A stretch of DNA of 64,000 bases, taken from contig NC_043014.1 of the NCBI RefSeq assembly GCF_006345805.1, positions 25,482,001-25,546,000 of the forward strand, written 5' to 3'. A model generated the notes under the pieces. It worked only from the letters and a program-made list of their open reading frames with translations. It made no database searches and was not told the DNA's origin. Below are positions 2 through 37,578 of this stretch, in pieces; positions within the stretch are counted from its first letter, which is position 1, and the number at the start of each line of letters is the position of its first letter. This DNA is from Octopus sinensis. Lineage: Eukaryota. Position numbers and translations under genes: made by a program.

Positions 2-3000
2 CATTGTATCTTCAGTGGAAAAACGACTTTGATTGGTTTCTTGAGTTTTGAAAGAACTTTTTTGTTGGTTATGGTCTAACTCTTTGGTATTGAGGTGTAG
101 GATTGGCTTTAAAACAGACCCTACTTTGCACTGAATGTTCCAAATGGATTTGGAAGAATCTTGAAAAACTTTTTCTGTTCTTCTAATGGAACTATGGGAA
201 ATGGAGGAAGACAATGAAGAGTAAGCAGAAGAGGAATGAATATTAGAAATAGAAGAGTCTCTTTCGGAAGACTTCTTAAACTGAACCTTCAAACTTGATG
301 CATGTGTCCCGTTAAGAAATTTTTGTCCTTTAGAAAATGTGTAAGAAACTGCTGCTGTACCATGGCGGTTGTGTGTCTTCAAGTGTCCCATCAAATTAGA
401 CTTTTGCGAAAAGGTACGCTGACATAGGCCACATCCATATGGCTTTTCTCCAGTGTGCACTCGAGTGTGTCGATTTCGATCAGAGGATGTGAAAAATGCC
501 TTATCACAGTAATCGCAGTGGTAGGGTCGTTCACCTGTATGTGTGCGGAGATGGTAACGCAAGTGGGAAGACTGTGAAAATGTACGGAAACAGATTTCAC
601 ACTGGTTTGGGGACTTCTCCTCAGAGATTTTTTTATTCCCAGCCACTATAGGTTGAGATGGTGCTGACTGTTCTTTCTCATTTGTCTTGGTAACTGGCAC
701 AAGCTTTTCAACTAAAACTACATCAGATTTTTCCTTTACCAAGTCACATACTTTTTCCTCTGTTGCAACATTTTCTGGATCTTTATCTGACAAACTTAGA
801 GATTTGAGGAGGTTGCTAGTTTCCTTGCTAGTTTCTGTTGTTTGTGGATCAGATGGCTGCTCTTCCATCAAATCAACATTTCCAGTGGTTACATTCATGG
901 TTCCCAAGCTCCTGTTCAGTCCTTTGTTGTTATAGAAGCTTTCATTAGATTTGAATACTGATCTAGATGGAATTCTGCCAGATAAATCTTTCTGTGAAGC
1001 AGATGTTGATATTGTAGAATCAAAGGCTTTAACATTTGTGGCCCAATTCAGGTTATCTTCTTGAGGTTGTTGGTTACACTGGTGTTTAGAAAGCTGAATG
1101 CTATCTGGGAAAGACTTTTCACACACAGCACAGCTTAGTGTAGCTGACAAATATGTGGCCGTATCAGATAGTGAATCATCAGAAATAGTGACTGTTCCAG
1201 ATTTCACAGGCAGCCATGATGAATCTGACTTATTGGATGCATGTGGAGTGGACGTTGTCTTTTCTTTTTTCTTGTACTCTGGTTTTTTCACCAAACTTGG
1301 ATGAGAAGCTTTGAGATGATTAGTGAGACTGTAATAATTAGTAAACTTCTGTTGACAAGCAGGACAACAGAAATTGATTTCAGAATGATTGGTGATTGTA
1401 GAGTGAGTTTGTTGATGTCTTGCCAACATAGAAGAAGTTGAAAATTTTTTTGGGCATAAACGACATCGATAAGGTCTATCACCAGTGTGAGAGCGAGTGT
1501 GGATGAGTAAATTTGAACGCTGAGTGAATCTTTTTCGGCAATGGTTGCATTTGAAAGGTTTCTCACCTGTATGAACTCGTGTGTGACGTTTCAGATCAGA
1601 TGATGTGAAGAAAGCTTTCCCACAATGTCTGCAGCCATAAGGTCTTTCTCCAGTGTGTGTTCGAATGTGATAAGTTAAGTGACATGCCTGAACAAAAGTA
1701 CGACCACATATTTCACACTGGTGTTGTTTACGATTATTTTCTAAACTTGGTGAACTTATTGGAAATTTTGGCCTTATTTTGCCTTCTTGATTTAATGAAG
1801 TTTTAGATTGTTTCATAACAGCCTCGGGGTCATTCCCTGATTCATCCACAGCAGCTTGTGTAATTGTAGTGTCTTTCTGTATGGATGCATTTTGAAAATT
1901 TACCTGCCTTTTCAAACTTTTTACCTGATTTTTAGATTTAGCCTTGGATTTTGTAGCATTATAAGCTACACTTTGTGTATTTTCATTGCATCTTTTGTAA
2001 GCTGGGGATTCTTCAGTAAATGCAGAGTCACCAGTTAACCAACTGTGTCCTGCAATAGAGATCTCTAGAGGTTTAACACTTGGCCTATAGTTGTGAGTGG
2101 TCTTAGAAATTAATCTATTGGACTTAGACCTGTTGAATAATTCAACTTCTTTGGAATCAGAAGCATCTTTTCTCTCCTGTGAGACAGAGTCTGCATCAAA
2201 TTTTGATGTAGATGTTATGTAGGTCGATGATGGATTGTCTTGAAACTTTTTGTCTCCTTTATTAAGTTGCCAATGACCAGATCTAACCTGGAGAAGTGTT
2301 ATTGGTTGAATTGTATTTTCTTTTCTGTGTCTGTCACTCTTCTTATGCACTACAACATGCTGACCAAGACTAGAGAGGTGTTGAAAGCGTTCTAAACACA
2401 TACTACATTGAAATAATTTATTGCCAGGATTCTCCATGTTATTTTGTCTTTGGTATAACTTTTTAGACAAGGAAATGGTGAACTTGTTGGGATAATATGT
2501 TCTATTTTGGGTTTCAACATTACTGACACCAGGCTCAGCAGAATGTTTCACACTGAATGTATGTTGTCTTCCAGCATAGAGTTTCTTATGGTGCCTAACC
2601 TGAACAAGGCTGGTTGTTACCCAACAGCATACATTGCACACGTACTTGCAGATTGAAGTGTGTTTCTTCAAATGCAGTAATAAAAAGACATTGAGATAGA
2701 ACCGACGAGAACAGTAGCCACATCTGAATGGCTTACGTTGTCTATGTCTTGAAGAATGTTGTCTGAGTGCAGATCTGGTGAAAAAGGATTTTGAGCAGAC
2801 TTTACAGGAATAATGTTTCTGCTCATTATGAGTCATGATGTGATTGATCAAAAGGCTGGAGTGGTCAAAGGACTTCATACAAAATGGACATTGGAAACCA
2901 CTATACTGCAAACGAGGTGCTAATGTTGTCATCATACTGACTAATTTCTTTGAACCAACTGGATCCTCAGATTCTACAGAAGCTGGTAAAGATGTAAGAT

Positions 3001-6000
3001 ACATGTTACCATCATTGCTGACATATGTGCTAAGATCTAAAGTAATATTTTCTGAAGGCTCTGCCTTATTTGAAGGGGATTCATTGCAACTGCTATTTTT
3101 TGTTTCACTGTAGGAGTTAGTTATCACTTCTCCTTTATCTGCATTATCTTTTCCATCAACTATCTCTTTGGGTTCTTCCTCAACATGGGACTGTGGCTGA
3201 GGAGAACATAAGTAACCTGCCATAGTTTCAAGGGGTTTTGAAGTTTTCTTCTCATGTACTTGGACAGCTGATTCAGAAGAATTTTCAAGTTCACAATGGG
3301 TTGCCATATGATATTTGAGAAAGTTTGCCCGTGAAAAGCACATTTGGCATATATTGCATTTGTAAGGCTTTTCACCTGTATGTAATCTTCGATGACGATA
3401 TAACATGGCTGTTGAGAAGAATTCACGGGGACAGAAATCACATTTGTATGGCTTTACACCTGAATGTGTTTTTACATGAGAAATAAGATTAGAGCTTTGA
3501 TTGAATCTTTTCTCACAATAGTCACAAGCAAAAGGTTTCTCACCAGTGTGTATGCGTGTGTGACGCTTGAGATCTGAGGATGTAAGGAACTCTTTACCAC
3601 ATGTATTGCAAATATGACAACGTTTCTGTTTGGTAATTCCACTTCTGACATTTAGATGGTTATGAGCATGTGTGGTGTGCTTGGAAAGTAGATGAATGCT
3701 GCTGAAAGTTCGCAAACACAGTTTGCATTTATAGCTTTTGGTTGTATGACATGCAAGATGTTTACTGAGAAGTGGAAAGTCTGAAAAGGATTTATTGCAG
3801 TGACTGCATCTGTATGGCCGTTGTGATGTAGCATGAGTGCGTAAATGGGACACAAGATTTGAATTCTGTGTAAAACGCTTGGCACAAAACTCACATTTGA
3901 AAGGTTTTTCCCCAGTATGAATTCGGGTGTGGCGATTCAAATCGGACGGCTTAGCAAAGGCCTTGCCACAATATACACACTTATATGGACGGTCACCAGT
4001 GTGTGTCCTGATGTGATATGTCAGGTGATTGGCCTGTTGGAATGTCTTACTACACAACATACATGCATACTGGTTCTCTTGGCCACACAACTTATCATCA
4101 CCTTGGATAGAAGTTCTCTTCAAATCCCTGCCATCATCTACGTTAGCATTATTTACAGTGGTTATACTGTTATCTGTACAGTTGCTCTCTCTAAAACATA
4201 CACCATTTGATGATGATAAAGACAGGGGAACAACATTTCCCATTTCATTTTTATTGGCATCAGTGAGTAGGTACCCTTTACTAGCTACTTTGTTAGTACC
4301 ATCATGTGACTCAGATGACAAACATGATTCTTCATCAGCACAAATTTTAGATGCAAGTTTATCCTGAAGTGGAGAAGACAAATCAATGCAGGTAATTTCT
4401 GGGTCAATTTTCAGTCTTTTGTCTGACCTTTCAGAATAGTTACAGTTTAATGTGTTAATATCTACAAATTCTTCACACAAGTAGGAAGACTCACCACTGT
4501 TTGTTACATTATTAGAATCTCTGTCAAAAGCAAAACTTTCTAGATTTGTTAGAGCCTGCATGTCAGGTATTTGGCATTGAATATCCTCTGATATACAAGG
4601 ACTGCTACTTGGAATGTTCAGTGCAGAAACAGCAAAGGAATTAGGAATAAGACTGCTGCACCCTGAGGACTGTTCACTACTATCATCACTAACATAGATA
4701 GGCAAAGTATTACAGTTGGTGGAACCAATGTCTCTGCTAGTTTCCCATTCCTCCAAAATTCCTTCACTTGTTACTAAACATGTGGGAATTTCATGAACTC
4801 TTGTTGATGAATCCCTGCCAGAGTTCACTTCTATATCCTTGCCTAATAATGACACTGGTTCTGTACCTGAGTAAGATGTTGAAACAGTTGAGTTACCTGA
4901 AGGTGTTAACAGCATCATATCATTCGTGCTAGTTAAATCAGCCACATTTGCAGTCTCCTCTAATTTTTGGCAGTTGTCAAAATCTAATTCAACTTTTATG
5001 TTGGATCCAGTCTGGCTTGGAGTTTGACTGATGCTATTTTTCACTATTCTACTACTTGTTTTTGTTTCATTGACACCGGCTTCTTTAGGATTTTCTACTC
5101 CTACAACTTTATCACTATTATATAACAATGACTGGAGGTTGTCAGCTAATGCAATTTCACTCTCAGAACTACTACTGCTTGTGTTGTTACTGCATGAGCT
5201 TTCTTTGCTGAAGTAACCTGCAGCATCAGAAGAAGATTGGACCACTGGCTCCTCGGTAATGACTTTGTCGTCAAAATCAAGTAGCACTGTTTTAACAGTA
5301 AATTGGTTATCAGGTGCCAAATCCTGAAGGACAGACTTACGATCTACTTCATCTTTTGTGACCACTAAAGGTAGTGGATCAACATCCATACTGCTATCAC
5401 ACAAGTCATGTTCCACCTTGAGATGTTGCACAAGATTACTGACTTCAAGAAACTGTCTTGAACAAAGGCTGCACATTAATGGGTTTTGACCTTCAACTGG
5501 GAAATTTTCAGCTGTGGTAGGATTTTCTTTTGCCACATTTGTTGGTGAAGAACTGATACCAGACATTAAGCTAGACAGCAGCTGTTTATCCCAACTACTA
5601 ACAGTTGATGGGAAGAAGTCAAGAGGAACCACTTTATCTTCTAGTTTCTTTACCTCAACTTGTTTAGAAACAATATTTAACAGTCCCTGAGTGCCTTTAT
5701 TATTTCTGTTAGTAGTAATATTATTATTGTTGATTGTATCATTAGGTGGGCTCTTGGTAGTACTGCTTTTTTTAGCAATGTCACCTTTGTTACTGATAAT
5801 GTTGTCAGTAGGAGTGCTGTTATCATTGTGGTGTACACGAATGTGTTGTGTAAGGGCAGCCCGTGTTGTGAAACCAATACTACACTGCATGCAGTGGTGT
5901 GGATAAACCTTGGTATGAGTGCGCAAATGAACTTTAAGGTTGGAGTTCTGTGTGAACCTCTTTCCACAGAAACGACATTGAAATGGCTTCTCTCCAGTGT

Positions 6001-6415
6001 GAATGCGAGTGTGTCTGTTAAGATCAGATGAAGTGGCAAAACGTTTTTCACAAAACATGCATCCATACGGCCTCTCACCTGTGTGCATTCGAACATGGAT
6101 TGTCAGCATAACTCCACTTACAAATACTTTGCCACAAATGTTACATTCATGGTGACCTCGTTTGCTGTTATCACTATGCTGTGACACTTTATGTGAATTG
6201 AGAAGTTCAACACTGCTAAAAGTTTTATTGCATTTTTGGCAGCAGTATTGTTTAGTAATTGGTGAGTGGTGGCCAGCACTTTCTTCATTTTCAGCAGCAT
6301 GGGTGCGCATATGACTTACAAGGTTATTCTTCCGACTAAAACGGCGAGAACACCACTTGCAGAAAAATGGCCTCTCCCCAGTGTGTACACGTGTGTGCTG
6401 GTTAAGATTAGACAT
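2..6415 (-). CDS. Giant multi-cluster C2H2 zinc-finger protein (ZNF-A), >=2138 aa, about 30 fingers, one uninterrupted reading frame, 3'-partial (runs off window start)
   Basis: Hand translation of the minus strand gives tandem C-x2-C-x12-H-x3-H fingers with TGEKP/TGERP linkers, e.g. [28 protein letters not shown] (~6450), FKCEFCAKRFTQNSNLVSHLRTH (~3900), YGCGLCQRTFSQKSNLMGHLKTH (~440). Clusters lie at ~6450-5830, ~4070-3295, ~2895-2345, ~1720-1395 and ~603-372, with single fingers near 5450 and 1100. All share one frame, open at base 2. Spacers were not fully hand-checked, but the ORF track lists no ATG-to-stop piece in this frame, implying no internal stop. The frame stays open upstream to TAA at 6603-6601; first in-frame ATG is 6415. 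Confidence 0.93.
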   Translation of the reverse strand, partial: MSNLNQHTRVHTGERPFFCKWCSRRFSRKNNLVSHMRTHAAENEESAGHHSPITKQYCCQKCNKTFSSVELLNSHKVSQHSDNSKRGHHECNICGKVFVSGVMLTIHVRMHTGERPYGCMFCEKRFATSSDLNRHTRIHTGEKPFQCRFCGKRFTQNSNLKVHLRTHTKVYPHHCMQCSIGFTTRAALTQHIRVHHNDNSTPTDNIISNKGDIAKKSSTTKSPPNDTINNNNITTNRNNKGTQGLLNIVSKQVEVKKLEDKVVPLDFFPSTVSSWDKQLLSSLMSGISSSPTNVAKENPTTAENFPVEGQNPLMCSLCSRQFLEVSNLVQHLKVEHDLCDSSMDVDPLPLVVTKDEVDRKSVLQDLAPDNQFTVKTVLLDFDDKVITEEPVVQSSSDAAGYFSKESSCSNNTSSSSSESEIALADNLQSLLYNSDKVVGVENPKEAGVNETKTSSRIVKNSISQTPSQTGSNIKVELDFDNCQKLEETANVADLTSTNDMMLLTPSGNSTVSTSYSGTEPVSLLGKDIEVNSGRDSSTRVHEIPTCLVTSEGILEEWETSRDIGSTNCNTLPIYVSDDSSEQSSGCSSLIPNSFAVSALNIPSSSPCISEDIQCQIPDMQALTNLESFAFDRDSNNVTNSGESSYLCEEFVDINTLNCNYSERSDKRLKIDPEITCIDLSSPLQDKLASKICADEESCLSSESHDGTNKVASKGYLLTDANKNEMGNVVPLSLSSSNGVCFRESNCTDNSITTVNNANVDDGRDLKRTSIQGDDKLCGQENQYACMLCSKTFQQANHLTYHIRTHTGDRPYKCVYCGKAFAKPSDLNRHTRIHTGEKPFKCEFCAKRFTQNSNLVSHLRTHATSQRPYRCSHCNKSFSDFPLLSKHLACHTTKSYKCKLCLRTFSSIHLLSKHTTHAHNHLNVRSGITKQKRCHICNTCGKEFLTSSDLKRHTRIHTGEKPFACDYCEKRFNQSSNLISHVKTHSGVKPYKCDFCPREFFSTAMLYRHRRLHTGEKPYKCNICQMCFSRANFLKYHMATHCELENSSESAVQVHEKKTSKPLETMAGYLCSPQPQSHVEEEPKEIVDGKDNADKGEVITNSYSETKNSSCNESPSNKAEPSENITLDLSTYVSNDGNMYLTSLPASVESEDPVGSKKLVSMMTTLAPRLQYSGFQCPFCMKSFDHSSLLINHIMTHNEQKHYSCKVCSKSFFTRSALRQHSSRHRQRKPFRCGYCSRRFYLNVFLLLHLKKHTSICKYVCNVCCWVTTSLVQVRHHKKLYAGRQHTFSVKHSAEPGVSNVETQNRTYYPNKFTISLSKKLYQRQNNMENPGNKLFQCSMCLERFQHLSSLGQHVVVHKKSDRHRKENTIQPITLLQVRSGHWQLNKGDKKFQDNPSSTYITSTSKFDADSVSQERKDASDSKEVELFNRSKSNRLISKTTHNYRPSVKPLEISIAGHSWLTGDSAFTEESPAYKRCNENTQSVAYNATKSKAKSKNQVKSLKRQVNFQNASIQKDTTITQAAVDESGNDPEAVMKQSKTSLNQEGKIRPKFPISSPSLENNRKQHQCEICGRTFVQACHLTYHIRTHTGERPYGCRHCGKAFFTSSDLKRHTRVHTGEKPFKCNHCRKRFTQRSNLLIHTRSHTGDRPYRCRLCPKKFSTSSMLARHQQTHSTITNHSEINFCCPACQQKFTNYYSLTNHLKASHPSLVKKPEYKKKEKTTSTPHASNKSDSSWLPVKSGTVTISDDSLSDTATYLSATLSCAVCEKSFPDSIQLSKHQCNQQPQEDNLNWATNVKAFDSTISTSASQKDLSGRIPSRSVFKSNESFYNNKGLNRSLGTMNVTTGNVDLMEEQPSDPQTTETSKETSNLLKSLSLSDKDPENVATEEKVCDLVKEKSDVVLVEKLVPVTKTNEKEQSAPSQPIVAGNKKISEEKSPNQCEICFRTFSQSSHLRYHLRTHTGERPYHCDYCDKAFFTSSDRNRHTRVHTGEKPYGCGLCQRTFSQKSNLMGHLKTHNRHGTAAVSYTFSKGQKFLNGTHASSLKVQFKKSSERDSSISNIHSSSAYSSLSSSISHSSIRRTEKVFQDSSKSIWNIQCKVGSVLKPILHLNTKELDHNQQKSSFKTQETNQSRFSTEDTM

Positions 6416-6968
6416 TGTAGAGAACACCTTATCACATGATCTGCATTGATAAGCCTTGTAGCCAGGGTAGATCTGCAGATATTTATTAAAATGGCCAGAA
6501 TAGTTAATGATTTGTAAGAAATACTTGCAAGTATAATCCACATGTACCGTCAGTAGGAAATGGCAAATGTGAGATATTTTAAGAGGAATTTATATGATGA
6601 TTAGCAACAGATATTGGTTGTTGTAGTTTGGGTGGAGTCAATGGCTGTTCCCTTTGGACGGGATCCATATATGAGAAGGTCATAACTAAGCAACTGGAAG
6701 AGTTTTCATGGCTAAGAAGTTAAAGCACATCACTTGGCCCCATATGTTGTAGGAGTGAGAGTAAAAAGACTTTACAGCAAGAGTGTAGCTGTTGCTACGT
6801 AGAAGATTGATGATGGGAATGTTTTCTGAATCTAGCTGCAACAGATGTTGATCAGACTTGACTGCATGGTAGTGAGACAGTATTGCCATGTGTATCCATG
6901 ACAACACGTCTGACTGGATGCAGCCAGTCATGATTACTTTCAACAAGTCACAATAAGAAAGTGTAAAC

Positions 6969-11759: not shown

Positions 11760-13075
11760 ACTCTCTTCACAGTGAGGGTATTTTACCCTCCTTCAGATAG
11801 TTGTTGTTGTGTAAAGCTGGAACAATGCAAACTACAAAATGAAAATAAAATAAAACAAAGCTACAGTTTTATCTTGTATTTCTATATTTCAGGATGAAGA
11901 CCCCCTTCTTCAGGACATTCGGAAAAGCAGTGGTTGGAAAAAGTTTGTTGTTTAGTTGTGTGTGTGTGTGTGTAGGAGGAAGGGGGCAGGGCAGGAAGGT
12001 GATGTGTGGACTGTTGTTTCTATAGCAACAGTCTGCTTTGTGTAGTTCCTTCCTATTGTTAATGGCTAGTTTCATTTATAAGGAGAGCTTCCATAATTCT
12101 GAGACTGGCCCTGTTGCCTTGGATTACCTTGATGCAAACTTTGAAATTCCAGGTTTGGCACTTCTTAAGGTGTTTCTTTATCGAAGTGTCTGTCTGCATA
12201 TGCTCCTTTATACAGATGTGTAGTTTCCTAGTGGTACTTCCTATATAGGATGCTCTACATTTATTGCAGACTACCTCATATACTACATAGGCCCGTGAGC
12301 ACCCCACGGTGCACTCTGTGGTATTTTTCCTTGACAGGACTTTTCTCAAGGATGGACTGGTATGTACCAACTGTATGTTAAGTCCCTCCCCGCAAATGGC
12401 ATGCTGGATAGCTGCTGTTGTTCTGTCCTCAAAGTAGGGCAGTCTAAGGAAGCACTTTACTAACCTGATGTTAAGGGCTTTCTTGTGTTGTTTACCTGCT
12501 TTCATGCTTTGCAGATGCAGTTGTTTGGCGCCTGATGGCGGATAACCATTGTGTGCTAAGTTCCTGAGGAACCGCATGGTGTTGGTGGCTTTGTCAGTTA
12601 CTTCATTGCAGCTGTCTCTTATGCATGTTATCTCATTCTGTATGTATGCAGCTTTGGATCTGGTGGGCAGGCCTGATTTGTAATGTGCATACAGATACCT
12701 ACTGGCCACTTTTTTTTTTAATAAAAATTCATCTAGATGTAACCCTCCTCTGTGATCCTGATTTGAAAATCCAGCAGAGAGAGGGTTCTGGACACATGTG
12801 GGTGTTCTATCTCTAACTTTATGTGATTGTCGATGTTGAATTTTTTATGTATGGTGATTGCTTCTTCCTGGGAAGGGGCAAGCGTCAGGATGTCATTGAC
12901 GTACCTAGAGAAGAAGACACATGAGTGGCAGGTGTTAAGCACTGTGTGTTTGAGCTGGTCCATGTACAAGATAGCCAGCAGGCCTGAGAAGCTGGATCTG
13001 TTTAAATATCTCATCATTGAATTGGAAGTAGGTGTTCCCTACTATTTTGACAAGTAGTTCATAGATATCCGAGGG
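11760..13075 (-). mobile_element. Penelope-like element (RT, thumb, GIY-YIG endonuclease), degenerate, 5'-truncated
   Basis: ORF 12733-13017 has the RT core LAILYMD...FSRYVNDIL...LSLLDFQI. ORF 12059-12709 has the thumb (YLYAHYKSGLP...NGYP) and a GIY-YIG-like VVYEVVCNKCRASYIGSTTRKLHICIKEH. Confidence 0.88.
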
Positions 13076-15078: not shown

Positions 15079-16372
15079 CGAGGGATGTCCAAAAAGTAAT
15101 GCCCCTGACCCACTTCCCATAGCAGTAGAGCAACAAAACATGGCACAGTTATTAGTCTTTTTCTACATAGGAACTACCCAGAGTTACGCATTTCTCCCAT
15201 CGTTTGATGCAGCTCTGGAGACCGTTTTTGTAGAAGACCGCAGCTTGGTCCTCCAACCACGACATGACTTCAGAAATCAAGGCTGCATCATCTGGGAAAC
15301 GCTTTCCTTTCAAAAACAACTTCATGGCTGGGAAGAGGTGAAAATCAGAGGGTGCAAGGTCAGGAGAGAAGGGGGGATGGGGGAGGAGTGCATAGCCGCA
15401 CGCCTGAGCTTCTGATCTGGCGACACGCGAGTTGTGGACCGGAGCGTTGTCCTGTAGGAGGAGGATGCCTTTGCTGATCTTGCCCCGCCTCTTGATTTTG
15501 ATAGCTTCTCTTAATTTCCTCAAAAGTGAAGCATAATAGGCTCCTGTAATTGTGGTACCCTTTGCCAGGAAATCTGTCATCACTACTCTGTCCTGGTCCC
15601 AGAAGACTGTGAGCATGACCTTGCCAGCGGAGGGCTGCACTCTTGCCTTCTTTGGAGGAGGTGAGTCACGGTGCTTCCACTGCATTGACTGGGCTTTGGT
15701 CTCTGGATCATAGTGATGGACCCAGGTTTCATCCTGTGTAATCAGTCTTTTGAAAAATTTTGACTCATCTTCTTGGCACATCTCCAAATTTCATCCTCGA
15801 GCACTCGACGCGTTCTTGCTTCTGGAAAGGTGTGAGCAACCTGGTAATCCATCTGGCAAATACCTTTTGCATATGCAAATGGTCATGAATGATAGTTTCC
15901 ACAGACCCAGTACTAATCTCGACCTCATGGGCTATTTGGTGAATAGTTATGCGTCGATCTTCCAAAATGGCAGCCTCAACTTGACGGACAGATGCCTCAT
16001 CAATGGCAGAAGCGGGGCGACCAGATCTGGGAGCTGTTTCCACAGAGTTCCGACCATGTTTGAATTCACGATGCCAGCGTTTTACAAGGTCATATGATGG
16101 GGCATCATCACCATAAGTTATTTTCATTTCATCAAAAGTCTCCCATGGTGTGCGTCCTTTCAAATACAAAAACCGGATCACTGCTCAACACTCAACAGGC
16201 TCCATTTCACACTTGACTCAGTTCAAACACCTGTAAATCAGAAACCACAATTAGTTCAGAGCTGTAATTTGCCACTTAATCTATAGAGATATAAATAATT
16301 GCACATGCAAAATTTCAGCTAGATCAAACAACTGCAAGTGGGTCAGGGGCATTACTTATTGAACGTCCCTCG
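15079..16372 (-). mobile_element. Full-length mariner (DD34D) DNA transposon, 1294 bp, 37-bp TIRs, TA target duplication
   Basis: Left TA|CGAGGGATGTCCAAAAAGTAATGCCCCTGACCCACTT; right end reverse complement TA|CGAGGGACGTTCAATAAGTAATGCCCCTGACCCACTT (3 mismatches). TA at 15077-15078 and 16373-16374. Confidence 0.96.
15152..16205 (-). pseudogene. Mariner transposase with one nonsense codon and one frameshift
   Basis: ATG at 16205 gives MEPVEC*AVIRFLYLKG (TGA at codon 7, likely from CGA). HTH domain in ORF 15765-16181, +1 frameshift near 15790. Catalytic ORF 15152-15787 has TQDETW, QDNAPVH and HPPFSPDLAPSD, with 34 residues between the second and third Asp. Confidence 0.93.
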
Positions 16373-17482
16373 TACCATGTACTGGTAGGAATCTTATCAA
16401 CGAATGCATGATGGAAGCAGTAGAGGAAATATGTCCAGTATAAAATAAGTTTGTTTCAGAATATCAGTCTTGCTGCAAATAATTTGTTCATAAAATATAA
16501 GATATTGAGCATAATATAATTTCTCAAGTGATTGACCAAAAGTTTTATGTTGTATTCTCTTGCACTTGATGGAACCTCTCAAGTGGTATTCAGTTATGAC
16601 ATCGTCAGATTATAATGCTGAATGGAAATACTTATAAGTGTAACAACCAATGGAGAAAGAAATGCATGTGCAGTAAAAGGTTTGGTAAGGTAAATTACAA
16701 AAGCTTGTGAAGTTAGTAGATGGTCAAAACCTATGTTTCTTCATCGTATTGTATATCAGCAAGCAATGTGCAGTAAATATTTGAATGTCTGATGCCATAA
16801 AACCTATTATGTCAGCTTATATTTCATTCAGTCTCCACAACTTACTCATCAACAGTCTTACAATTTTCTGTAGGATATTGATTTTGAGTTTCATAACTTG
16901 CCTAATCATACATCAGTTCAATAGCTTAGATTTAGAAATGTCCTATCAATATTTTTACCCTAAAATAAAAATGAAAAGCACTAGAAACCAAAAGTTTTTC
17001 CATACAAACCAAAGTTATTTCCAAATTTGGAGTAGGGTGGCCTAGGCTATTCCTGGGAAGTATGACTTATAATCGAAGTTATATCCTATGGATATACAGT
17101 ACTGCCACTTCTAAAATCAGAAAAATTCTGAATTTCAAAACATATCTGGTCCCAAATAAGTGATTGTGTACCTGTATTTCTAATGAGAGGAGAGTTGACC
17201 CAAATTACTAATATCAAACAGTAAATGGTAATGGAAATTAGCATTTTTTTATGGTACTGACAGATCATATGAATCAATTTACTCTGAAATTGTAAGGAGA
17301 AACAACTTGATCTGTGATTTTAAAGCATTCAAAGCTAAAAAGAGTAATTTTAATAATTGGTGCTACAAAAGTTGAAGCTTGATATTTTAGACATTTTGAA
17401 ATTAAAATATCAGTTTCACATTTTCATTCCATATCCTTCTTTCAGAAATATACTGAAAGTAGTTATTTTTATGAAAAGCATG

Positions 17483-19649: not shown

Positions 19650-22600
19650 GCAGGTAGGGGAGCTCCGAAAGAGGTCTCGGGAAGTAGCATCCCTGCCTTC
19701 CCAAGCTAGTTTTCCACCACATTTCTTAAAAATCATGACCACTCATGTCTAGAAACTGAGGTATGCTCCCTGTAGGAAATGTCTAGAACCTGAGGTATGC
19801 TTCCTGTAGGAAATCCAGCTCCAAAAAAAACTCATGACAATAGCAAAGAAGCATGGGCACCAGCCAGCCCAAAGATTGGGGTGAGCTGCACCTGTCTACC
19901 TCAAAAGGAAAGTGCAAATCGTCATCTTGGGTCATGCAAGCATGACTTGCCTTATGATGGCTGATGACCTGAGAAGCTTGGAGTGAGGTTGGAAAGTTGG
20001 AATGTGGGAAGTCTGCATAGAAGGGGAACTGAAGTGTGTGGGGAATTGAGGTGGAGGATGGTGGATGTGTGCTGTGTGCAAGAGGCTAGGTGGAAAAGCC
20101 AGGGTGCAAGATTTGTAGGGGTCAAGAGAAGAAGGTACAAGTTGTGGGGGTTGGGAAATTGGCAAGGGGACTGGAAGAGTGGGAGTTTTAGTGAAGGAAG
20201 AACTCTGTGAGAATGTAGTGGAGGTCAGGAGAAAGAGTGATAGTGATGCCAGAAGTATTAGCATTTGAGGAAGAAGTGGTGAGGGTGATTTGTGAGGATG
20301 GTCCACAAAGTGGAAAGAGGGATCACTGAGAAAGAGCGGTTCTTTGATGAAATGGCAAGAGAGCGGGACTTACATAGGATAGATGATTTGGTTTTGGGCA
20401 TGGGTGATTTTAATAGAATTGTTGGGAAATGGATCCAAGGCTTTGAGGGTGTGCATGGGGGAAACGGAATTGGGGAGAGAAATATGGAAGAAAGGATGCT
20501 GTTGAAGTTTTGCGATGAGAAGGAGTTGTGTGTGGCGAACACATGGTTAAGGAAAACATAGAAAAGGAAGGTGACTTTCAGCGCAGGAAGGAATGAGACA
20601 GATTGATTTTGTATTGGTTGGCAGGAAAAACAGAAAATATCTGAGAGATGTGAAGACAATACCAGGGGAGTTGCAGTACAGGTTGGTGGTTGCTGACTTG
20701 GATAAGAAGAAAATTAAAAAGTGTGTGAGAAAGGTAACGGTTAAAGGCATGTGACAAAGCACGTGGAAGGACGAATGGTAGGAGAGATCGAGGAGATACG
20801 TGGTGGTGGAACAAGGAGGTGAGGGATGCGATAGCAAAGAAAAAGGCACACAAAGTTTTATGTGATAATAGGACTGAGCAAATAAAAGCCTGGTATATTA
20901 ACATGAGAAATTGTACAAAGAGGGTGGTTGCGAGATCTATAAAGAAGAAAGCTGAGAAGTTGAGCAGGCTGAGTGAGAACCCAGATAGAGTGTTTAGGTT
21001 TATTAAATCAATGAAAAATAATGGAAGAGATGTTGAGGGAGGAAGATGCATGAGGGAGAGTGATTGAAAGTTGAATCTTAGTGAGAAGGACAGAGGAAGA
21101 GTTTGGAAGGAGCGTATGGAGGGAATGATAAATGAGAGAATGAATGGGATCAGATGGTGGAAGCTGCTGTGGTGAAGGAGCCAGTGGAGAGGGTTAGTCA
21201 GGAAGAAGTAGTGGAGGCAATGAAGGAAATGAAAACAAGAAAAGTAGCTGGTCCATCAGAAGTAAGTATAGAAATGATAACTGCAAGTAGAAAGATAGGG
21301 ATTGTTGTGCTGATGGAGTTCTGCCAGTGTGTGTTGGATGGAGGAGGAATGCCAGATGATTGGGCACTAAGTGTGGTGGTACTGATCTTCAAGGGAAAGT
21401 TACTGGAGCATGCAATGACGAAAAGGGTGTTGAAGAGAATTTGGAAAACAGTGGATATGGACGAGATACAATTTGGTTTTATGCCAGGAAAGGGGACAAT
21501 AGATGCAGTGTTTATTGTAAGGAGAGTGCAAGAGAAATACCAAGATAAGGAGAAAGAGTTGTACATGTGCTTTGTTGATCTGGAGAAGGCATTTGATAGG
21601 GTTTCAAGGAAGGTGATTGAGTGGGCATTAAGGAAGGTGTACTAGAGGTAATAGTGAGGGCAATGATGAGTTTGTATGAAAGGGTAAAGACAAGAGTTAG
21701 AGTTGGATCTGAGCTGTCGGAGGAGTTTGTGATGAAAGTTGGCATGCATCAGGGATCTGGGTTGTCACTGTTGTTGTTTGAAATACTGGTTGATGTGATG
21801 ACACGGAGTGCAAAAGAGGGATTGATAATAGAGATACTGTATGCAGATGACCGTGTTCTGATGAGTAAAATGATGGAGGTATTGAGGGAGAAGTTTTGGA
21901 AATGGAAGGAGGTGTTTGAAGCTAAGGGGGTGAAAGGAGAAGTATTAGTAAGATAGAGCCATGTTGTGTGTGTGGGAGGAGGGTAATGGCAAATGCGGTG
22001 TTGTGTATGAAATGGATTCATGGTAGATGTACGAAAATGAAGAAGGTGACCCCAAGGATGGCAAGAGATTTTATTTGTGGAAGATGTGAGAAAGGAGCTG
22101 GAGAGCTGGCGGAACCAGTGGAAATGCCTTGTGACAAGGTGGAAATGGTGAGAGGGTTTTGTTATTTGGGAGATAGGGTTGATGTAAGTGGTGGATGTGA
22201 AGCAACTGTGACAGCGAGAGTGAGACTTGGCTGTGTGAAGGTCAAGGAATGTGGAGCATTATTATATGGGAAAAGGTTTTCCTTGAAGATGAAAGGAAGG
22301 GTTTATCAAAGTTGCATGAGATCTGCAATGCTGTATGCAAGTGAGACATGATGTCTGAGGGAAAGTGAAATGGCAATTTTGAGAAGGACTAAGAGAGCAA
22401 TAGTGAGAGCAGTATGTGGTGTGAAACTATTGGATAAAAGGAGGGCTGAGGACTTGATGGGGATGCTGGGGCTGGAGGAATTGGTGGAACAGCTGGCAAG
22501 GGCGAATGGAGTGCAGTGGCATGGACATGTAATGAGGAGGGATGAGGATCATGTTCTAAGGAGAGTGCTTGAGTTTAAAGCAAATGAACTGCAAAAGCGA

Positions 22601-26607: not shown

Positions 26608-27182
26608 TGTCCCTTAAAATAGCAAACATTCCTTAGCTACACACAAGACAGAAAAAATGCCAAAAAGGTTGGTTCCTCTCGAATTTTTTGTAAATTCTAA
26701 AACATATCTCCTTCTGTGTATATATATGTACTACCAAACAAACATGATTTTTATTGAACTCCTAATATTTTTGTTGAATATTTTCTTAAATACTTTCTTG
26801 TAAACTGTTTTTAACATTTTCTTATTATTATCAAAAAAATGTATATGTGTAACTGAATACCTTCGTGACAACCAGTACTTAACACAACAAAGCTTATACA
26901 ATGCTTTACATTTTACTTTTGACAATCTTTTTCTAAAAAAGTGAAACCAGTTAAGTGAACAAACATCTTTAAAATTGCATTTTCAAACCTTCTTTCATAT
27001 ATATTTTCTCTCATGCAATATCTTACAAATTTACTTTGTTATATATATATATTCCAAGAAAATTAGAGGTTGTGAATCCAACAAACTAAGGGATAATATC
27101 CCAATTTATATTCCTGTATGTTATATTTTAATAATTACTGGTATCTTTATATTTTTTAAATTTTATTTATATTTTTTTATTT

Positions 27183-28088
27183 TATCTAGTTTCAGCTCAC
27201 GGGCTGTGACCATGCTGGGGCACCGCCATTTGGTGTTGCTACATGATTTTACTTCACGAATGCTTTTAGCAATTGACATTTGATGCATGAGAGAGTTTGA
27301 TGCAGCTGCCCTCATCTGCACCTCCTGCCGTGAAGTTGGTTCATCTGAGACACCTGACAGGAAGAGGTCCAGCTTTATTTTAAAGACATCTGCATCCACC
27401 CCATGCAGGTCTCCCAGGTCCTTTGGGAGGATACTGAAGAGCTGTGGGTCTCTGAAGCCCAGGCTATCACAGTATCTTGTCCTACATCTTGATGGCAAAT
27501 TTGGAGTCCTTGGCACTCTGCATTGGCGCCCAGTTGTAGTATTTGTGTAACTCTCGATGCCAAAGTTTGGGACAAGTCCTTCCAGATGTATATTATGGCA
27601 TATCTTTCTTGCCTACGCTCTAAGGAATAGAGTCTTAATCTCTTGAGTCTTTCCCAATAGCTTATATGCTGCACAGAGGCTATCTTCTTCATGTAGCTTC
27701 ATTGGATTGCCTCCAGTTCTGAGATTAATTTGACTCTGGTTGGTGACCATAGCTGAGAGCAATAGTCAAAGTGGCTTAGGACAAGTGTCCTCCAGAGGAC
27801 CATCATGGTTTCTTGGTCTCTTGTTTTAAAAGCACTAAGAATCCATCCAGTCAGCCGCCTACATTTCATTGCCAATTTAGCAACATGCACATGAAAGGTT
27901 GCATCATTACTCATGTAAATACCCAGGTCTTGCACTGATTGTGCCTCTGGGATTGCAATCCCTCTGGGTCCAGTGTATTTATTGGGTATTGCATTTAGTT
28001 TTGCATGCTGATAGCATAAAGCTTGAAACTTTTCAGCATTGAACTGCATACTATTCTTTTCAGCCCACTTGTATATTTTGTCCAGCTC
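27183..28088 (-). mobile_element. 5'-truncated CR1-clade LINE (3' end of ORF2 plus 3' UTR)
   Basis: ELDKIYKWAEKNSMQFNAEKFQAL...VQDLGI...LSHFDYCSQLWSP, SYWERLKRLRLYSLERRQER, FKIKLDLFLSGVSDEP. Confidence 0.9.
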
Positions 28089-28107
28089 ACATATATATAT
28101 ATATATA

Positions 28108-29792
28108 CTAGCATAGTTACCCGGCATTGCCCGAGTTACATACAATTGAAGAATTAGACTTTTCTGTTATATTTTCTGCAATGAACTGAAATACCTATGT
28201 TTCGAATTTCATCTAAATTCCTGATGAGGGTTATTTCCCTCTTTACACACCCAAACAAAATTGTAATCATGCCACGTGTATCCCATACTACTGATTTTTA
28301 TGCGCATATTTCAAAATTCCAGTCTTATAGAACTTGTTAAAAGGATTTTGCTCCTGAAAAATGGAGGTCATGGAGCTCTAAAATGTGAGAATTAACGCCC
28401 CTATTGGGGGTGGGCATCTTAATGTCAACCAGAGAAGTTGAATTGTTGAGAATCTTTTTAACTTGGGTCTTATATCTATTGTTTGAATTTCTTTGAAATA
28501 GGAAATATATGTTCACTGGGTTTGTAAAAGAGAGCAAAGCTACAGAAAACCAAAAGATGAATGATCACAATAAGCAGTCAGCTACACTACCTTAGTCGTT
28601 ACCACTCCCAATGTAGTGTTCCTCACCATCCAGGTGACAGGTACAGCTGTAAGATGCATTACGAATCTATAGCAATTGGAAGGGCGTGACCCAACTGAAA
28701 TAAACATCAACAACTGTGTGACATGAGGGCTAAGGAGAAATGAAAGTGTCACCTCTGGAGTTTGCAAATGACCACTATACTCATACGTATCTGGACAGAA
28801 TAAATTTACAATCTATAAATGTCTTTGAATAATCAGTCACTCATCTGGGAAGGCCTTGAAATCAATGTTACCATGTGGGGACTATGTGTGACCCAGTGAT
28901 AATAAAAAGACTGAAAGGAGGTCTGCAATCAAATAACTTTACTCAACACTTTGCAACTGAATCAGTGGAGGCAAAGATGCCTTTCATTTACTTGAAAATT
29001 TATGCAGCACATTGCAGAAATCACAATGTAAGTGTATGTCAAAGCAAAGTGTTACACTGTTGTACCATTGAATTACAAATAATGCTCATCTTCTATGCTC
29101 GGATGACCCCACAGCTTCCAAGAGTACAACTATTTGTCTTTGCTTAGATAAAATGACAAAATTGTGGGTGTTAAGTCCCCATGAAGGAGTCTTTCTAACT
29201 TGTAAGAAGACGAAATTTTATAAATATTACTTCATTTGTATCTAATATCTATGGTTAAAATTTCATCAACAGCAAAAATATATGAATTGTCATGGGAGTT
29301 GTGGCCCTTATGCATAGAATATAATTTCCAAATTTCGTAAAGATCCATTCAGTACTTTTGACTTAGTTTTGGATCATAAAAGAAATGACTAAAATTTGGG
29401 AGTTAAGGCCCACATTAGGATGTCTTAGAATCCTCATGTGAAGTGGAAACTTTGAGAATACTTCTTGATGTGTGTCAATTACCCATGGTTGAAATTTCAT
29501 GAACATCGAAAATTTATGAATTTTCATGGGGGGGTTCTGCCCCCTTTAAGCCATCTGAAATTCAAACCAAACATATTGCATTATACCCGCCCTTATGCAT
29601 TGAATCTAAGTTTCAAATATCATAAGGATCCATTCAGTAATTTTGGTCCATGAAATTGTATGAAACACACAGCATTACTCTTCTCCCTAAGTTTGGATTT
29701 TGTGTTCCAAATTTCATTATGGTCGGTGCAGCAGTTTTAGAATGTATAAGTAATACACGAACACATGAAGACATTGTCTTTGATATAATAGA
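28108..29792 (-). mobile_element. Non-autonomous Helitron-like element (~1.7 kb)
   Basis: Minus-strand 3' end hairpin (ctcgggcaatgccggg) then ...TGCTAG|T at 28108; putative 5' TC end near 29792 followed by an aaaactgctgcaccgaccataatgaaatttgg motif. The 5' boundary is uncertain. Confidence 0.55.
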
Positions 29793-34200: not shown

Positions 34201-34420
34201 TACCAACAAAGGGTGGATGTAGGGATCTTCAAAACAAAAGTGGATCTACTCCTGTCCAGAGTTCTGCATGACCCAACCACACGGCAATAAACAAAGATGA
34301 CAGCAGGAACATCAAACTCACCTCATTCACCAAATGCCACACATCAGAGGAGGTTTAGTACAAGTGTAGCAAAGTGAATGTTGCTGCCTAGCATGGCAAC
34401 AGATCTCAAGCTGAAATATT
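31230..34420 (+). mobile_element. Near full-length degenerate CR1-clade LINE (possible ORF1 remnant, APE, RT, 3' UTR)
   Basis: Broken APE motifs (~31600-32150), AAGPDGFPAILLKSCK, NYRPISLTS, QHGF, VDVIYLDFAKAFDK, SGVPQGTVLGPLLF, a YA(E)D variant of YADD, and a C-terminus and UTR like 27183 and 37806. Confidence 0.88.
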
Positions 34421-35942
34421 TTAATAAGCCTTATTGTATAATTTTGTATTCTATATAAATACTGATTGTTATGTAATGATTTAGTTATCGAAGTTATGTA
34501 TATAATTATTAGATTTTAACTCTACGTTTATTTGTAAGACTTTACTTAGCCAAAGAGATTTATAGATCGTTAATAGTATTACGAGTTTTTTTAAAGTTAA
34601 GTTTCATGTCTATACATTTATTGATAGCATAAATTTTAGTCTTTATGCTTTATGCTATATGTGTTGATAGTTATTTAGTTATTATTTTAAATATTTTATA
34701 ATTGTTAGATGTGTACTTAAATCTAATATATGAATAGCGACTTTTTAGTTAAATAATTTGGTAATTAAATTTTTGGACTATAACTGTGTTAAGGATATTT
34801 GTGAGTTTATTATGTTTTTTTAATCTATTTTGTATATTCATATATATTTCTAATTGTAGACTTCGTTCTATTATAACTTATATATAGCTATTTTCAATTG
34901 ATAATTTATAGTAGTATTTTTCATTGATAAATATATTCGTAGTATTTATTGGATACTATATAACTACGGATTGATAATATCATTGTATAAGTATTTAGTC
35001 GTTGAAGATATGTATTTCACTATTTCATTTTAGTTCTTAACTATACGGTTTTTGGAAGTTATTAATTAGCCAATGAGATATATGGATCGTTAAATACTTA
35101 TAGGGTTCTTTTAAGATAGTTTATTTGTTTACATTTTGCTTTTTCATCTTTAATCTTTTAATTTTTAATATATTTCATAAGTAATAATGAATAATTAATT
35201 TATTTAGATTTTTATTATACGTGTATATATATTTATTGATAGAGATAATTTTAGATCTTAATTCTTATATTTATATACATTTATATATATTCATTGATAA
35301 TTTAGTTATTATTCAAATATTATATAATTATTTGATTTAAATTTAAATTTAATAATATGAATAGTGATTATTTTTTTGATTATTTTTTTGTTAAATAATT
35401 AGGTAATTAGATATTGACTATAACTGAGATTAGATTATTTATGAGTTAATTATGTTTTTTTAAAGCCATATTATATCTGAATAGATAAGTACATTTTCTA
35501 TCTATTCTTACCTTAAAAATTAATATTTAACATTATAATCGATTGTATGACATAATCATAATCGTTAAAGTTTCTTGTTTGATAACAGGGTTTTTTATAA
35601 GAAAAATTATTATTTTATTTATTTCTTAAAAAAATATTGTTTAAATATATTTGATTATTTATTTAACTATTATCATTAACCTGAAGATTGACTATAACCA
35701 TAATTCGAATTATTAACTGAATTTAAATTATTGTAATTCGAATTAGGTTATGGGCATGAAACGATCGTAGTGGTTTTACTTTTTATCTTATATTAAATTT
35801 TTTAATACTTTTTGATAGTTATATATATTTAAAATAAAAAATAAAAGAATAAAAATAAAAATAATTAAATATATATTAAAATAAATTAATAATTTTAAAT
35901 TTTTAACTTTAAATTTAAATAATTTAAATTTTAAATTTTGTA
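34420..35942. other. Extremely AT-rich low-complexity block abutting the assembly gap
   Basis: Very few G/C; degenerate internal duplication with a drifting ~520-650 bp offset. Confidence 0.75.
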
Positions 35943-36042
35943 NNNNNNNNNNNNNNNNNNNNNNNNNNNNNNNNNNNNNNNNNNNNNNNNNNNNNNNNNN
36001 NNNNNNNNNNNNNNNNNNNNNNNNNNNNNNNNNNNNNNNNNN
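35943..36042. other. Assembly gap (100 N)
   Basis: Run of N; contiguity across it is not guaranteed. Confidence 1.
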
Positions 36043-37191: not shown

Positions 37192-37229
37192 TAAAATACT
37201 TGTTTAAACCTGCGTTAACTCCATTTTTT

Positions 37230-37388
37230 ATTCATATATATATATGTATATATATGAATATATATATATGTGTATATATATATATGTGTATATATATGTG
37301 TATATATATATATGTATATATATATATATGTGTATATATATGTGTATATATATGTGTATATATATATATATGCGTATATATATATGTA

Positions 37389-37419
<31 letters not shown>

Positions 37420-37533: not shown

Positions 37534-37575
<42 letters not shown>

Positions 37576-37578
37576 ATA

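What the first reader, a model, noticed from the sequence alone, without database searches (positions are those of the whole stretch)
372..6060. One DNA-recognition module reiterated five times in ZNF-A
Seen, helix positions -1 to 6: TSSDLNR-QNSNLKV (~6050-5900), QANHLTY-KPSDLNR-QNSNLVS (~4060-3830), TSSDLKR-QSSNLIS-STAMLYR (~3615-3370), QACHLTY-TSSDLKR-QRSNLLI-TSSMLAR (~1720-1400) and QSSHLRY-TSSDRNR-QKSNLMG (~603-372). Contact residues (Q/H/Y; T/D/R; Q/N) are kept while backbone residues and codons differ. Established: positions -1, 3 and 6 set triplet specificity and arrays read DNA antiparallel. Inference: the protein carries several spaced copies of a reader for about 5'-nAA-GCy-nGA-3'. 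It could engage multiple copies of one motif at once, for example looping DNA or coating a repeat family, maintained by selection on specificity. The last copy has lost the core Leu (L to R).
Basis: partly seen in the sequence, partly recalled or inferred. Interest (0 to 1): 0.8.

Follow-up and report, generated by a model that had tools for sequence, protein, structure and literature searches.

The report
Octopus zinc-finger protein with reiterated reader
A giant, uncharacterised octopus zinc-finger gene carries six (ancestrally seven) widely spaced copies of one three-finger DNA-reading cassette. Their base-contacting residues have stayed almost unchanged while everything else diverged, so the protein is probably a multivalent reader of one short DNA motif.

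Summary
Window 2-6589 (minus strand) is one open reading frame of 2196 codons that runs off the window's left edge. It is 100% identical to a 2276-aa database protein.

The repeated unit is a cassette A (Q..HL.Y), B (T/K.SDL.R), C (Q.SNL..). The B-C core occurs five times in the window and a sixth time just outside it. A decayed seventh copy lies upstream of the annotated start.

This is not chance or generic zinc-finger consensus. None of 208 other long poly-ZNFs has a B-C pair. Contact positions are 0.77-0.87 identical between copies, against 0.28-0.39 for other variable positions; ordinary poly-ZNFs show the reverse.

The copies are old. Silent sites between them are fully randomised, and copies pair by position with a distant cephalopod orthologue in which 55 of 56 helix residues are identical.

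The best reading is ancient intragenic duplication followed by purifying selection on specificity. The predicted motif (about 5'-nAA-GC(T/G)-nGA-3') and the looping or repeat-coating role remain untested.

Other giant cephalopod ZNFs and vertebrate ZNF236 show the same design, each with its own cassette.

The parts
2..6589 (-). ZNF-A open reading frame. It has 2196 codons, no stop and no intron, and is open at the window's left edge. The annotated CDS starts at the Met at 6413-6415 and ends about 240 nt beyond window position 1.
6299..6535 (-). Relic cassette m0. Finger A0 has lost its zinc ligands (6467-6535). B0 is TMSNLNQ (6383-6445) and C0 is RKNNLVS (6299-6361). The cassette is intact (QLGHLTY-KMSDLSR-QKSNLMS) in the distant orthologue L003.
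5828..6145 (-). Cassette m1: variant A SGVMLTI (6083-6145), B TSSDLNR (5999-6061), C QNSNLKV (5915-5977), D TRAALTQ (5828-5893).
5408..5473 (-). Lone finger EVSNLVQ. It and its flank are conserved in the distant orthologue.
4064..5407 (-). 448-residue Ser/Asn/Thr-rich spacer with a few conserved islands (5273-5302, 4742-4795, 4445-4486, 4373-4402).
3662..4063 (-). Cassette m2: A QANHLTY (4001-4063), B KPSDLNR (3917-3979), C QNSNLVS (3833-3895), then DFPLLSK (3746-3808) and SIHLLSK (3662-3727).
3293..3610 (-). Cassette m3, which has no A finger: B TSSDLKR (3548-3610), C QSSNLIS (3464-3526), D STAMLYR (3380-3442), RANFLKY (3293-3358).
2345..2890 (-). Non-cassette fingers HSSLLIN, TRSALRQ and LNVFLLL (2660-2890) and lone finger HLSSLGQ (2345-2407). 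Their helices are only about 0.52 identical to the distant orthologue.
1301..1717 (-). Cassette m4: A QACHLTY (1655-1717), B TSSDLKR (1571-1633), C QRSNLLI (1487-1549), D TSSMLAR (1403-1465), NYYSLTN (1301-1366).
371..601 (-). Cassette m5: A QSSHLRY (539-601), B TSSDRNR with Arg at helix position 4 (455-517), C QKSNLMG (371-433).

Best explanation
ZNF-A is an intronless, uncharacterised Octopus gene for a C2H2 zinc-finger protein of at least 2276 aa. Its fingers sit in small clusters separated by spacers of 80-450 residues.

An ancestral three-finger cassette was duplicated within the gene to seven copies. This happened before Octopus split from a much more distant cephalopod. The cassette is A-B-C, joined by canonical TGE(K/R)P linkers and sometimes followed by a fourth finger.

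Since then each copy has been held by purifying selection, strongest on the helix residues that contact bases. Framework residues, silent sites and spacers have drifted. In Octopus the N-terminal copy fell outside the translated region and decayed.

Shown here: the reiteration, its age, and the selection pattern.

Inferred from the canonical C2H2 recognition code and antiparallel docking: each cassette reads about 5'-nAA (finger C), GC(T/G) (finger B), nGA (finger A, where present)-3'. The protein would then be a multivalent reader that can hold several copies of one short motif at once, on clustered sites, a dispersed or tandem repeat, or distant sites brought together. Avidity would compensate for the low information of a single cassette.
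For: Anatomy:
- One ORF with 29 fingers in the window and 32 in the full protein.
- Pfam finds only C2H2 families. PDB matches are ordinary DNA-binding arrays. AlphaFold2 models cassette m5 as three beta-beta-alpha fingers with pLDDT 91.
- Linkers after A and B are canonical and conserved (identity 0.87 and 0.93). The linker after C is not (0.17), which marks a three-finger unit.

Reiteration beyond chance.

Age of the copies:
- Codon identity at identical residues is 0.423 against 0.424 expected.
- Copies m0-m3 pair by position with those of orthologue L003/P0212, which was found with a spacer-only query at E 8.5e-50.

Selection:
- dN/dS is 0.06 in fingers against 0.37 in spacers, with no replacement in any A/B/C finger between two Octopus assemblies.
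- Against L003, A/B/C helices are 0.98 identical, non-cassette finger helices 0.52 and spacers 0.33, with silent sites saturated.
- The untranslated relic m0 has lost contact residues and zinc ligands and diverges near-neutrally.

Precedent for separated clusters that read the same element: ZEB1/2 (PMC8304685) and ZAS/HIVEP proteins (PMC3048431).
Against: - No binding data exist. The motif is only a code-based prediction, and Tyr at position 6 and Thr/Lys at position -1 are weakly determined.
- The cassettes are not identical. Position -1 of B is T or K, position 6 of C varies (V, S, S, I, G, A), and finger A is canonical in only three window cassettes.
- The predicted motif is not enriched in the 64-kb window. 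No repeat family carrying it was sought genome-wide.
- Outside the helices the copies are only slightly more alike than generic fingers (0.42 against 0.34 +/- 0.07), so common descent rests on modest framework signal.
- The octopus-specific background is small: about 100 fingers of three paralogues plus 10 of the neighbouring ZNF.
- The organism of the distant orthologue is unknown.
Confidence: 0.6

Rival explanations
1. The cassettes are conserved but are not equivalent readers of one motif. Either the variable positions (-1 of B, 6 of C, presence or type of A and D fingers) tune each cluster to a different site, or some clusters bind RNA or protein. The protein would then read a composite or heterogeneous set of targets rather than many copies of one.
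For: - Cassette-specific residues (KPSDLNR in m2 against TSSDLNR in m1; QNSNLKV, QNSNLVS and QSSNLIS) are themselves conserved position by position in the distant orthologue. This suggests each copy has its own constraint.
- The variant A finger of m1 (SGVMLTI) is identical in both species.
- Fourth fingers differ between cassettes.
Against: - Positions 2, 3 and 6 of B and -1, 2 and 3 of C are invariant in all six copies.
- These positions dominate specificity in the canonical code.
- Canonical linkers argue for DNA binding.
Confidence: 0.25
2. The likeness is kept by recent duplication or by ongoing gene conversion between copies (concerted evolution). It would not be due to selection on specificity.
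For: In a tree of B-C units the copies of ZNF-A group together against those of a paralogous giant ZNF. This holds even with helix columns removed, with support 89/97.
Against: - Silent sites between copies are fully randomised: 0.423 observed against 0.424 expected codon identity.
- DNA identity between copies is only 53-62%.
- Copies pair by position, not by species, with the distant orthologue.
- Framework positions have diverged to near background.
Confidence: 0.05
3. Convergence: fingers that were not copies of one another independently acquired the same contact residues.
For: Framework identity between copies is only about 1.3 SD above that to generic finger pairs.
Against: - The same order A-B-C with the same linker types recurs each time.
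- Shared non-contact signatures recur as well, such as KRFTQ before the C helix and HTR[IV]HTGEKPF after B.
- DNA-level repeats of 81-114 nt are detected.
- The protein-specific clade survives without helix columns.
Confidence: 0.05
4. These are just the commonest helices of octopus or generic poly-ZNFs, so the recurrence is chance.
For: Q.SNL.. alone is moderately common. Q-N-x accounts for 3.7% of background fingers.
Against: - T/K-D-R is at 0.5% and Q-H-Y at 0.07%.
- B-C adjacency is 0 in 208 proteins against 6 of 6 here. There is none in three octopod paralogues or in the neighbouring ZNF.
Confidence: 0.02

Closest known systems
ZEB1/ZEB2 (deltaEF1/SIP1)
   Same: C2H2 clusters separated by a long flexible linker each bind the same short element, CACCT(G). 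Both are needed, and the spacing and orientation of the half-sites can vary (PMC8304685).
   Different: ZEB proteins have two clusters, a homeodomain and known cofactor motifs. ZNF-A has six or seven cassettes and no other Pfam domain. No sequence relationship beyond generic fingers was seen.
ZAS / HIVEP / Schnurri proteins
   Same: These are very large proteins with two widely separated finger units, each binding the same consensus GGGGNNNNCC (PMC3048431).
   Different: They have two finger pairs, not three-finger cassettes, and two copies only. They also carry acidic and Ser/Thr-rich modules that define the ZAS domain.
Vertebrate ZNF236
   Same: It has about 30 fingers in clusters of four split by long spacers, and cassettes that recur with the same contact residues: KPSDLVR-VKSTLTA-TSGSLKV-TSGHRKT twice, KSSHLKQ-SSGVLKA-TGGSLRR-TSLNCKK twice, and KPSQL.R-QK.AL..-QK.N... 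twice. It shares the KAFAKPS(D/Q)L.RH.RIH finger with cassette m2.
   Different: - It has three cassette types with two copies each, rather than one type six or seven times.
- No spacer homology was found.
- Its similarity to cassette m4 is no higher than for generic poly-ZNFs, at 37-39%. Orthology is not supported.
- Its only functional lead is a Perturb-seq link to ribosome biogenesis.
Other giant cephalopod ZNFs: LOC115211753/LOC106883442 (P0021, P0011, P0023), LOC115211127/LOC106880551 (P0082, P0046), and unnamed P0084/P0089
   Same: - The size (2300-3000 aa) is similar, and the one paralogue gene examined (P0023, locus L004) is also a single uninterrupted CDS.
- The layout of clusters and long spacers is the same.
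- One cassette is reiterated 6-9 times, and its helices are conserved in distant orthologues.
   Different: - Each has its own contact residues: V-D-V / I-N-A / Q-A-V; S-A-x / Q-H-V / Q-N-R; V-N-K / N-N-R / A-N-x.
- No detectable spacer homology to ZNF-A was found.
- All are uncharacterised.
Drosophila D1 and vertebrate HMGA1 (multi-AT-hook satellite binders)
   Same: This is a functional analogy only. Many spaced copies of one small DNA-reading unit bind a repeated sequence and bundle it (PMC5957525).
   Different: They use AT-hooks that bind the minor groove, not zinc fingers. No evidence here shows that ZNF-A binds a satellite.
Fast-evolving tandem ZNF arrays (KRAB-ZNFs, PRDM9; proposed for expanded octopus ZNFs)
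   Same: They are C2H2 arrays that grow by finger duplication.
   Different: The selection pattern is opposite. In the 208-protein background contact positions are the least conserved (0.13-0.20, against 0.25-0.38 for other positions). In ZNF-A they are the most conserved, fingers have dN/dS 0.06, and no KRAB, SCAN or BTB domain is present.

Membership tests
C2H2 (Krueppel-type) zinc-finger proteins | C-x2-4-C-x12-H-x3-5-H ligand spacing with conserved Phe/Leu core | tested here: met
   29 fingers in the window and 32 in P0001. PF00096 scores 334 bits and PF13465 scores 391 bits.
C2H2 (Krueppel-type) zinc-finger proteins | TGEKP-type linkers between consecutive DNA-binding fingers | tested here: met
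   TGE(K/R)P follows fingers A and B in the cassettes (linker identity 0.87 and 0.93). The linker after C is not conserved (0.17).
C2H2 (Krueppel-type) zinc-finger proteins | beta-beta-alpha fold | tested here: met
   The AlphaFold2 model of cassette m5 has mean pLDDT 91.3 and three hairpin-plus-helix units. This is a prediction only.
C2H2 (Krueppel-type) zinc-finger proteins | sequence-specific DNA binding | not testable with these tools
   Inferred from canonical linkers, contact residues and similarity to solved DNA-bound arrays.
Effector-domain ZNF families (KRAB, SCAN, BTB/POZ, ZAD, PR/SET) | N-terminal effector domain | tested here: not met
   Pfam finds only zinc-finger families in the ORF. 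The intact N-terminus of orthologue P0212 carries precomputed zinc-finger families only.
ZNF236 orthologue | Specific similarity above generic fingers, collinear clusters and spacer homology | tested here: not met
   No spacer HSP with E<1. Identity to cassette m4 is 37-39%, below many generic hits. Cassette types differ.
Lineage-specific, rapidly diversifying octopus ZNF expansion | Recent paralogues, tandem gene cluster, diversifying contact residues | tested here: not met
   - No close paralogue appeared among the hits.
- Only one other ZNF lies in the 64-kb window.
- Contact residues are conserved, and dN/dS in fingers is 0.06.
Multi-cluster same-motif readers (ZEB-like, ZAS-like) | Separated clusters with equivalent specificity residues | tested here: met
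   B positions 2, 3 and 6 and C positions -1, 2 and 3 are invariant in six cassettes.
Multi-cluster same-motif readers (ZEB-like, ZAS-like) | Clusters shown to bind the same DNA element, with cooperative use of several sites | not testable with these tools
   This needs SELEX, PBM, EMSA or ChIP.

The most novel reading that the evidence does not exclude
ZNF-A is one member of an undescribed class of giant, probably intronless cephalopod zinc-finger proteins. At least three ancient paralogues belong to it, and similar unnamed proteins exist elsewhere. Each carries 6-9 spaced copies of its own three-finger reader.

Within a protein all copies keep, and may have changed together, the same contact residues. 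These proteins would act as multivalent architectural readers that bundle, loop or coat a repeated DNA element such as a satellite, a TE family or clustered regulatory sites. That would be a zinc-finger counterpart of multi-AT-hook satellite bundlers.
Probability: 0.2. Interest if true: 0.75.

Novelty: new variant of a known kind. Interest (0 to 1): 0.5.

Why it matters
Expanded octopus ZNFs are usually discussed as fast-evolving genes linked to transposable elements or the nervous system (PMC12513265, PMC10547256). This gene shows the opposite regime: deep conservation of specificity residues in many copies of one reader.

If each cassette reads the same short motif, the protein gives a simple test of how avidity and long flexible spacers turn low-information sites into specific targets. 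It would also show whether cephalopods use such proteins to organise repeated DNA.

The same design recurs, each time with a different cassette, in other giant cephalopod ZNFs and in vertebrate ZNF236. This suggests a general but undescribed architecture class.

The decayed N-terminal copy is a built-in control. Once untranslated, a cassette loses its contact residues and zinc ligands.

Tried and rejected
- **Whole-protein and cassette-region searches.** Both were swamped by generic many-finger proteins. No orthologue appeared beyond the 90% cluster, and the ranking reflects finger number rather than kinship.
- **Spacer-only search of P0212 in the word-indexed database.** It found only itself.
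- **PDB sequence search with cassette m4.** It returned only generic arrays (ZNF568, Aart, PRDM9, CTCF), with no specific relative.
- **Spacer-masked BLAST against paralogues and ZNF236.** Nothing significant came up, so collinearity of the paralogues could not be shown.
- **Predicted motif AAGCYNGA in the window.** There was no enrichment. A 64-kb window cannot test a genome-wide target.
- **Paper search for SRR9970007.** There were no hits, so the organism of the distant orthologue remains unknown. ERZ21867824 is likewise unidentified.
- **Cephalopod C2H2 paper.** It says nothing about finger cassettes or contact residues.
- **ZNF236 orthology.** Considered and rejected (see the membership test).
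- **L-to-R as finger inactivation.** Considered and not upheld. AlphaFold is insensitive to single substitutions, so this point stays open.
- **First column indexing of helix positions.** It was wrong and was redone.

Full report
**What is there**

On the minus strand, window 2-6589 is a single stop-free frame of 2196 codons that runs off the left edge of the window.
- It matches a 2276-aa database protein, P0001, with one residue different. It is identical to cluster member P0121 and 97.4% identical to P0122.
- The encoding loci are single uninterrupted CDSs on chromosome-size contigs of assemblies GCA_951406725.2 and GCA_001194135.2. To my knowledge these are Octopus vulgaris and O. bimaculoides.
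- Contig sizes for paralogues named by species suggest the window comes from O. sinensis. This is an inference.
- Pfam finds only C2H2 families.

**The observation**

A finger scan gives 29 fingers in the window part and 32 in the full protein. They sit in clusters of 1-5 separated by spacers of 80-450 residues.

The repeated unit is a cassette:
- A: Q..HL.Y
- B: T/K.SD(L/R).R
- C: Q.SNL..
- often a fourth finger, ..(A/S)ML.R in m3 and m4

TGE(K/R)P linkers follow A and B. The linker after C is unconserved, so the unit looks like a Zif268-type three-finger reader.

Three corrections apply:
- The B-C core occurs five times in the window. A sixth copy (LQKQLAS-KMSDLRR-QSSNLTA-QSSSLKM) lies in the C-terminal residues just beyond window position 1.
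- Only m2, m4 and m5 have the canonical A finger. m1 has a variant (SGVMLTI), m3 has none, and m6 has LQKQLAS.
- The region at and upstream of the annotated Met holds a decayed seventh copy (see 'Age of the copies').

**Is it more than chance?**

- Among 208 other long poly-ZNFs recovered by the searches (5662 canonical fingers), T/K-D-R at positions -1/3/6 occurs in 0.5%, Q-N-x in 3.7% and Q-H-Y in 0.07%. The adjacent B-C pair never occurs, against six of six here.
- Three octopod paralogues and the neighbouring ZNF in the window (46482-48635) have no such pair.
- Between copies, contact positions (-1, 2, 3, 6) are 0.87 (B), 0.77 (C) and 0.75 (A) identical. Other non-structural positions are 0.39, 0.28 and 0.41.
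- In the background the relation is reversed: 0.13 against 0.25 for random pairs, and 0.20 against 0.38 within proteins.
- None of 20000 random six-finger sets from single proteins reaches the observed excess.
- The DNA repeat finder independently recovers the five copies as a 114-nt family at 62-74% identity.

**Age of the copies**

At residues identical between copies, codon identity is 0.423. The expectation from the gene's own codon usage is 0.424, so silent sites are fully randomised. There is no sign of recent duplication or gene conversion.

A phmmer search with a spacer-only query (window:4064-5827:-) against 1.84 billion representatives found one true homologue, P0212, at E 8.5e-50. 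It lies on a 5.6-kb Logan contig of run SRR9970007 (L003). The contig carries the orthologue in two reading-frame pieces, which I analysed apart.
- Spacers are about 33% identical, and silent sites are saturated with pS 0.75-0.9.
- As a yardstick, a paralogue shows 67% spacer identity between O. bimaculoides and Argonauta, and 34% to an unidentified ENA sample. The Logan organism is therefore far outside the genus, but it is not identified.
- Even so, the A/B/C helices of m1-m3 are identical at 55 of 56 positions, including cassette-specific residues (KPSDLNR in m2, TSSDLNR in m1). Helices of the non-cassette fingers are 0.52 identical.
- In a tree of B-C units the copies pair by position across the two species. 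The reiteration therefore predates their split.

**The relic copy**

The orthologue has an intact N-terminal cassette, QLGHLTY-KMSDLSR-QKSNLMS. In Octopus the same stretch reads differently:
- YTCKYFLQIINYSGHFNKYLQIY, with zinc ligands replaced
- TMSNLNQ
- RKNNLVS

The annotated Met lies inside the second helix. The copy in GCA_951406725.2 has a stop just before that finger. The 174 nt upstream diverge by 4.0% between species, against 1.9% for the CDS and 5.6% further upstream. A cassette that left the translated region lost its contact residues, which supports selection as the reason the others keep theirs.

**Selection within Octopus**

Between the two assemblies, dS is about 0.05. dN/dS is 0.23 overall, 0.06 in fingers plus linkers (7 replacements, none in any A, B or C finger) and 0.37 in spacers.

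**How it probably works**

Shown: canonical fingers and linkers, and conserved contact residues.

Inferred from the established recognition code (positions 6, 3 and -1 read the 5', middle and 3' base; arrays dock antiparallel):
- C (Q-1, N3) reads nAA.
- B (R6, D3, T/K-1) reads GC(T/G).
- A (Q-1, H3, Y6) reads nGA.

Six such units on long, low-complexity spacers would allow several copies of the motif to be held at once. No binding data exist, and the motif is not enriched in this window (13 matches against 12.2 expected).

The Arg at helix position 4 of cassette m5:
- is fixed in all three Octopus proteins
- occurs in 1.3% of background fingers
- occurs in Zif268 finger 3 (sequence printed)

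The cassette models as three confident fingers. This last point is weak evidence.

**Context**

Other giant octopod ZNFs among the hits have the same design, each with its own cassette:
- LOC115211753/LOC106883442 reiterates V.SDL.V-ISRNLTA-QKSALTV six times. These copies are conserved position by position in Argonauta and in a distant sample.
- LOC115211127 reiterates S.SAL..-Q.AHLDV-QK.NR.R about eight times.
- Unnamed proteins P0084 and P0089 carry seven VHSNLIK-NPSNLTR-ASSNLK. cassettes.
- Vertebrate ZNF236 has three cassette types, each present twice.

Cassettes group by protein even without helix columns. No spacer homology links the paralogues. Whether each gene amplified its own cassette or underwent old concerted change is unresolved.

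Known precedents for separated clusters that read one element are ZEB1/2 (PMC8304685) and ZAS/HIVEP proteins (PMC3048431). Multi-AT-hook satellite bundlers are a functional analogy (PMC5957525).

**Verdict**

The evolutionary part of the interpretation (one reader, reiterated, kept by selection on specificity) is well supported. The DNA motif and the multivalent or looping function are reasonable but untested.

This is a new variant of a known kind: a multi-cluster ZNF whose clusters share specificity. It stands out for the number of copies, their age, and the recurrence of the design in several uncharacterised giant ZNFs.

Noticed in passing
window 6299-6589 (minus strand): A relic N-terminal cassette lies upstream of and across the annotated start codon. 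It is intact in the distant orthologue L003. The copy in assembly GCA_951406725.2 has a stop codon just before the relic B finger, and the stretch diverges near-neutrally. The true start of the gene is uncertain.
   Followed up: yes
left of window position 1 (P0001 residues 2158-2262; locus L002 about 16470-16790): A sixth cassette (LQKQLAS-KMSDLRR-QSSNLTA-QSSSLKM) and the stop codon lie outside the window. Its B and C fingers most resemble the N-terminal cassette m0 (CKWC...FSQ.SNL..HLRTH).
   Followed up: partly
window 5273-5302, 4742-4795, 4445-4486, 4373-4402, 2996-3037 (minus strand): Short islands in the otherwise fast-evolving spacers are conserved with the distant orthologue: FTVKTVLLDF, HEIPTCLVTSEGILEEWE, SYLCEEFVDINTLN, PEITCIDLSS and DLSTYVSNDGNMYL. 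They may be docking motifs. No Pfam family matches them.
   Followed up: no
window 46482-48635 (plus strand): A second ZNF open frame of 718 codons has ten contiguous fingers followed by a tail of about 380 residues without fingers. Its helices ([21 protein letters not shown], ...) show no cassette reiteration and none of the ZNF-A helix types.
   Followed up: partly
window 15155-16184 (minus strand): Mariner/Mos1-type transposase remnants (HTH_48 and Transposase_1) are split over two frames.
   Followed up: partly
window 21136-21642 (plus strand) and 38639-39145 (minus strand): Reverse-transcriptase fragments (RVT_1) from decayed retroelements. Neighbouring ORFs at 27166-28166, 38071-38517 and 39149-39754 gave no Pfam hit or were not scanned.
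   Followed up: partly
window about 34000-38000 and 39700-41800: Very AT-rich simple-sequence tracts (GC 0.19-0.27) give long spurious YIYIHT-type ORFs in several frames. There is also a strong GC-skew spike (0.63) at 20000-22000.
   Followed up: no
L003 about nt 3690-3720: The distant orthologue's reading frame shifts from frame 2 to frame 1 between cassettes m2 and m3. This could be an assembly error or a real change. The two pieces were analysed separately.
   Followed up: no
proteins P0084 and P0089 (Logan and ENA, unnamed): These 2650-aa proteins carry seven cassettes, VHSNLIK-NPSNLTR-ASSNLK.(-fourth finger), separated by spacers of 170-600 residues. They are the cleanest example of the same architecture. 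The organism is unknown.
   Followed up: partly
window 12062-12844 (minus strand): An open frame of 261 codons has a single Cys/His-rich stretch (CNKCRASYIGSTTRKLHICIKEH) and no Pfam match. It may be a repeat-element remnant.
   Followed up: no
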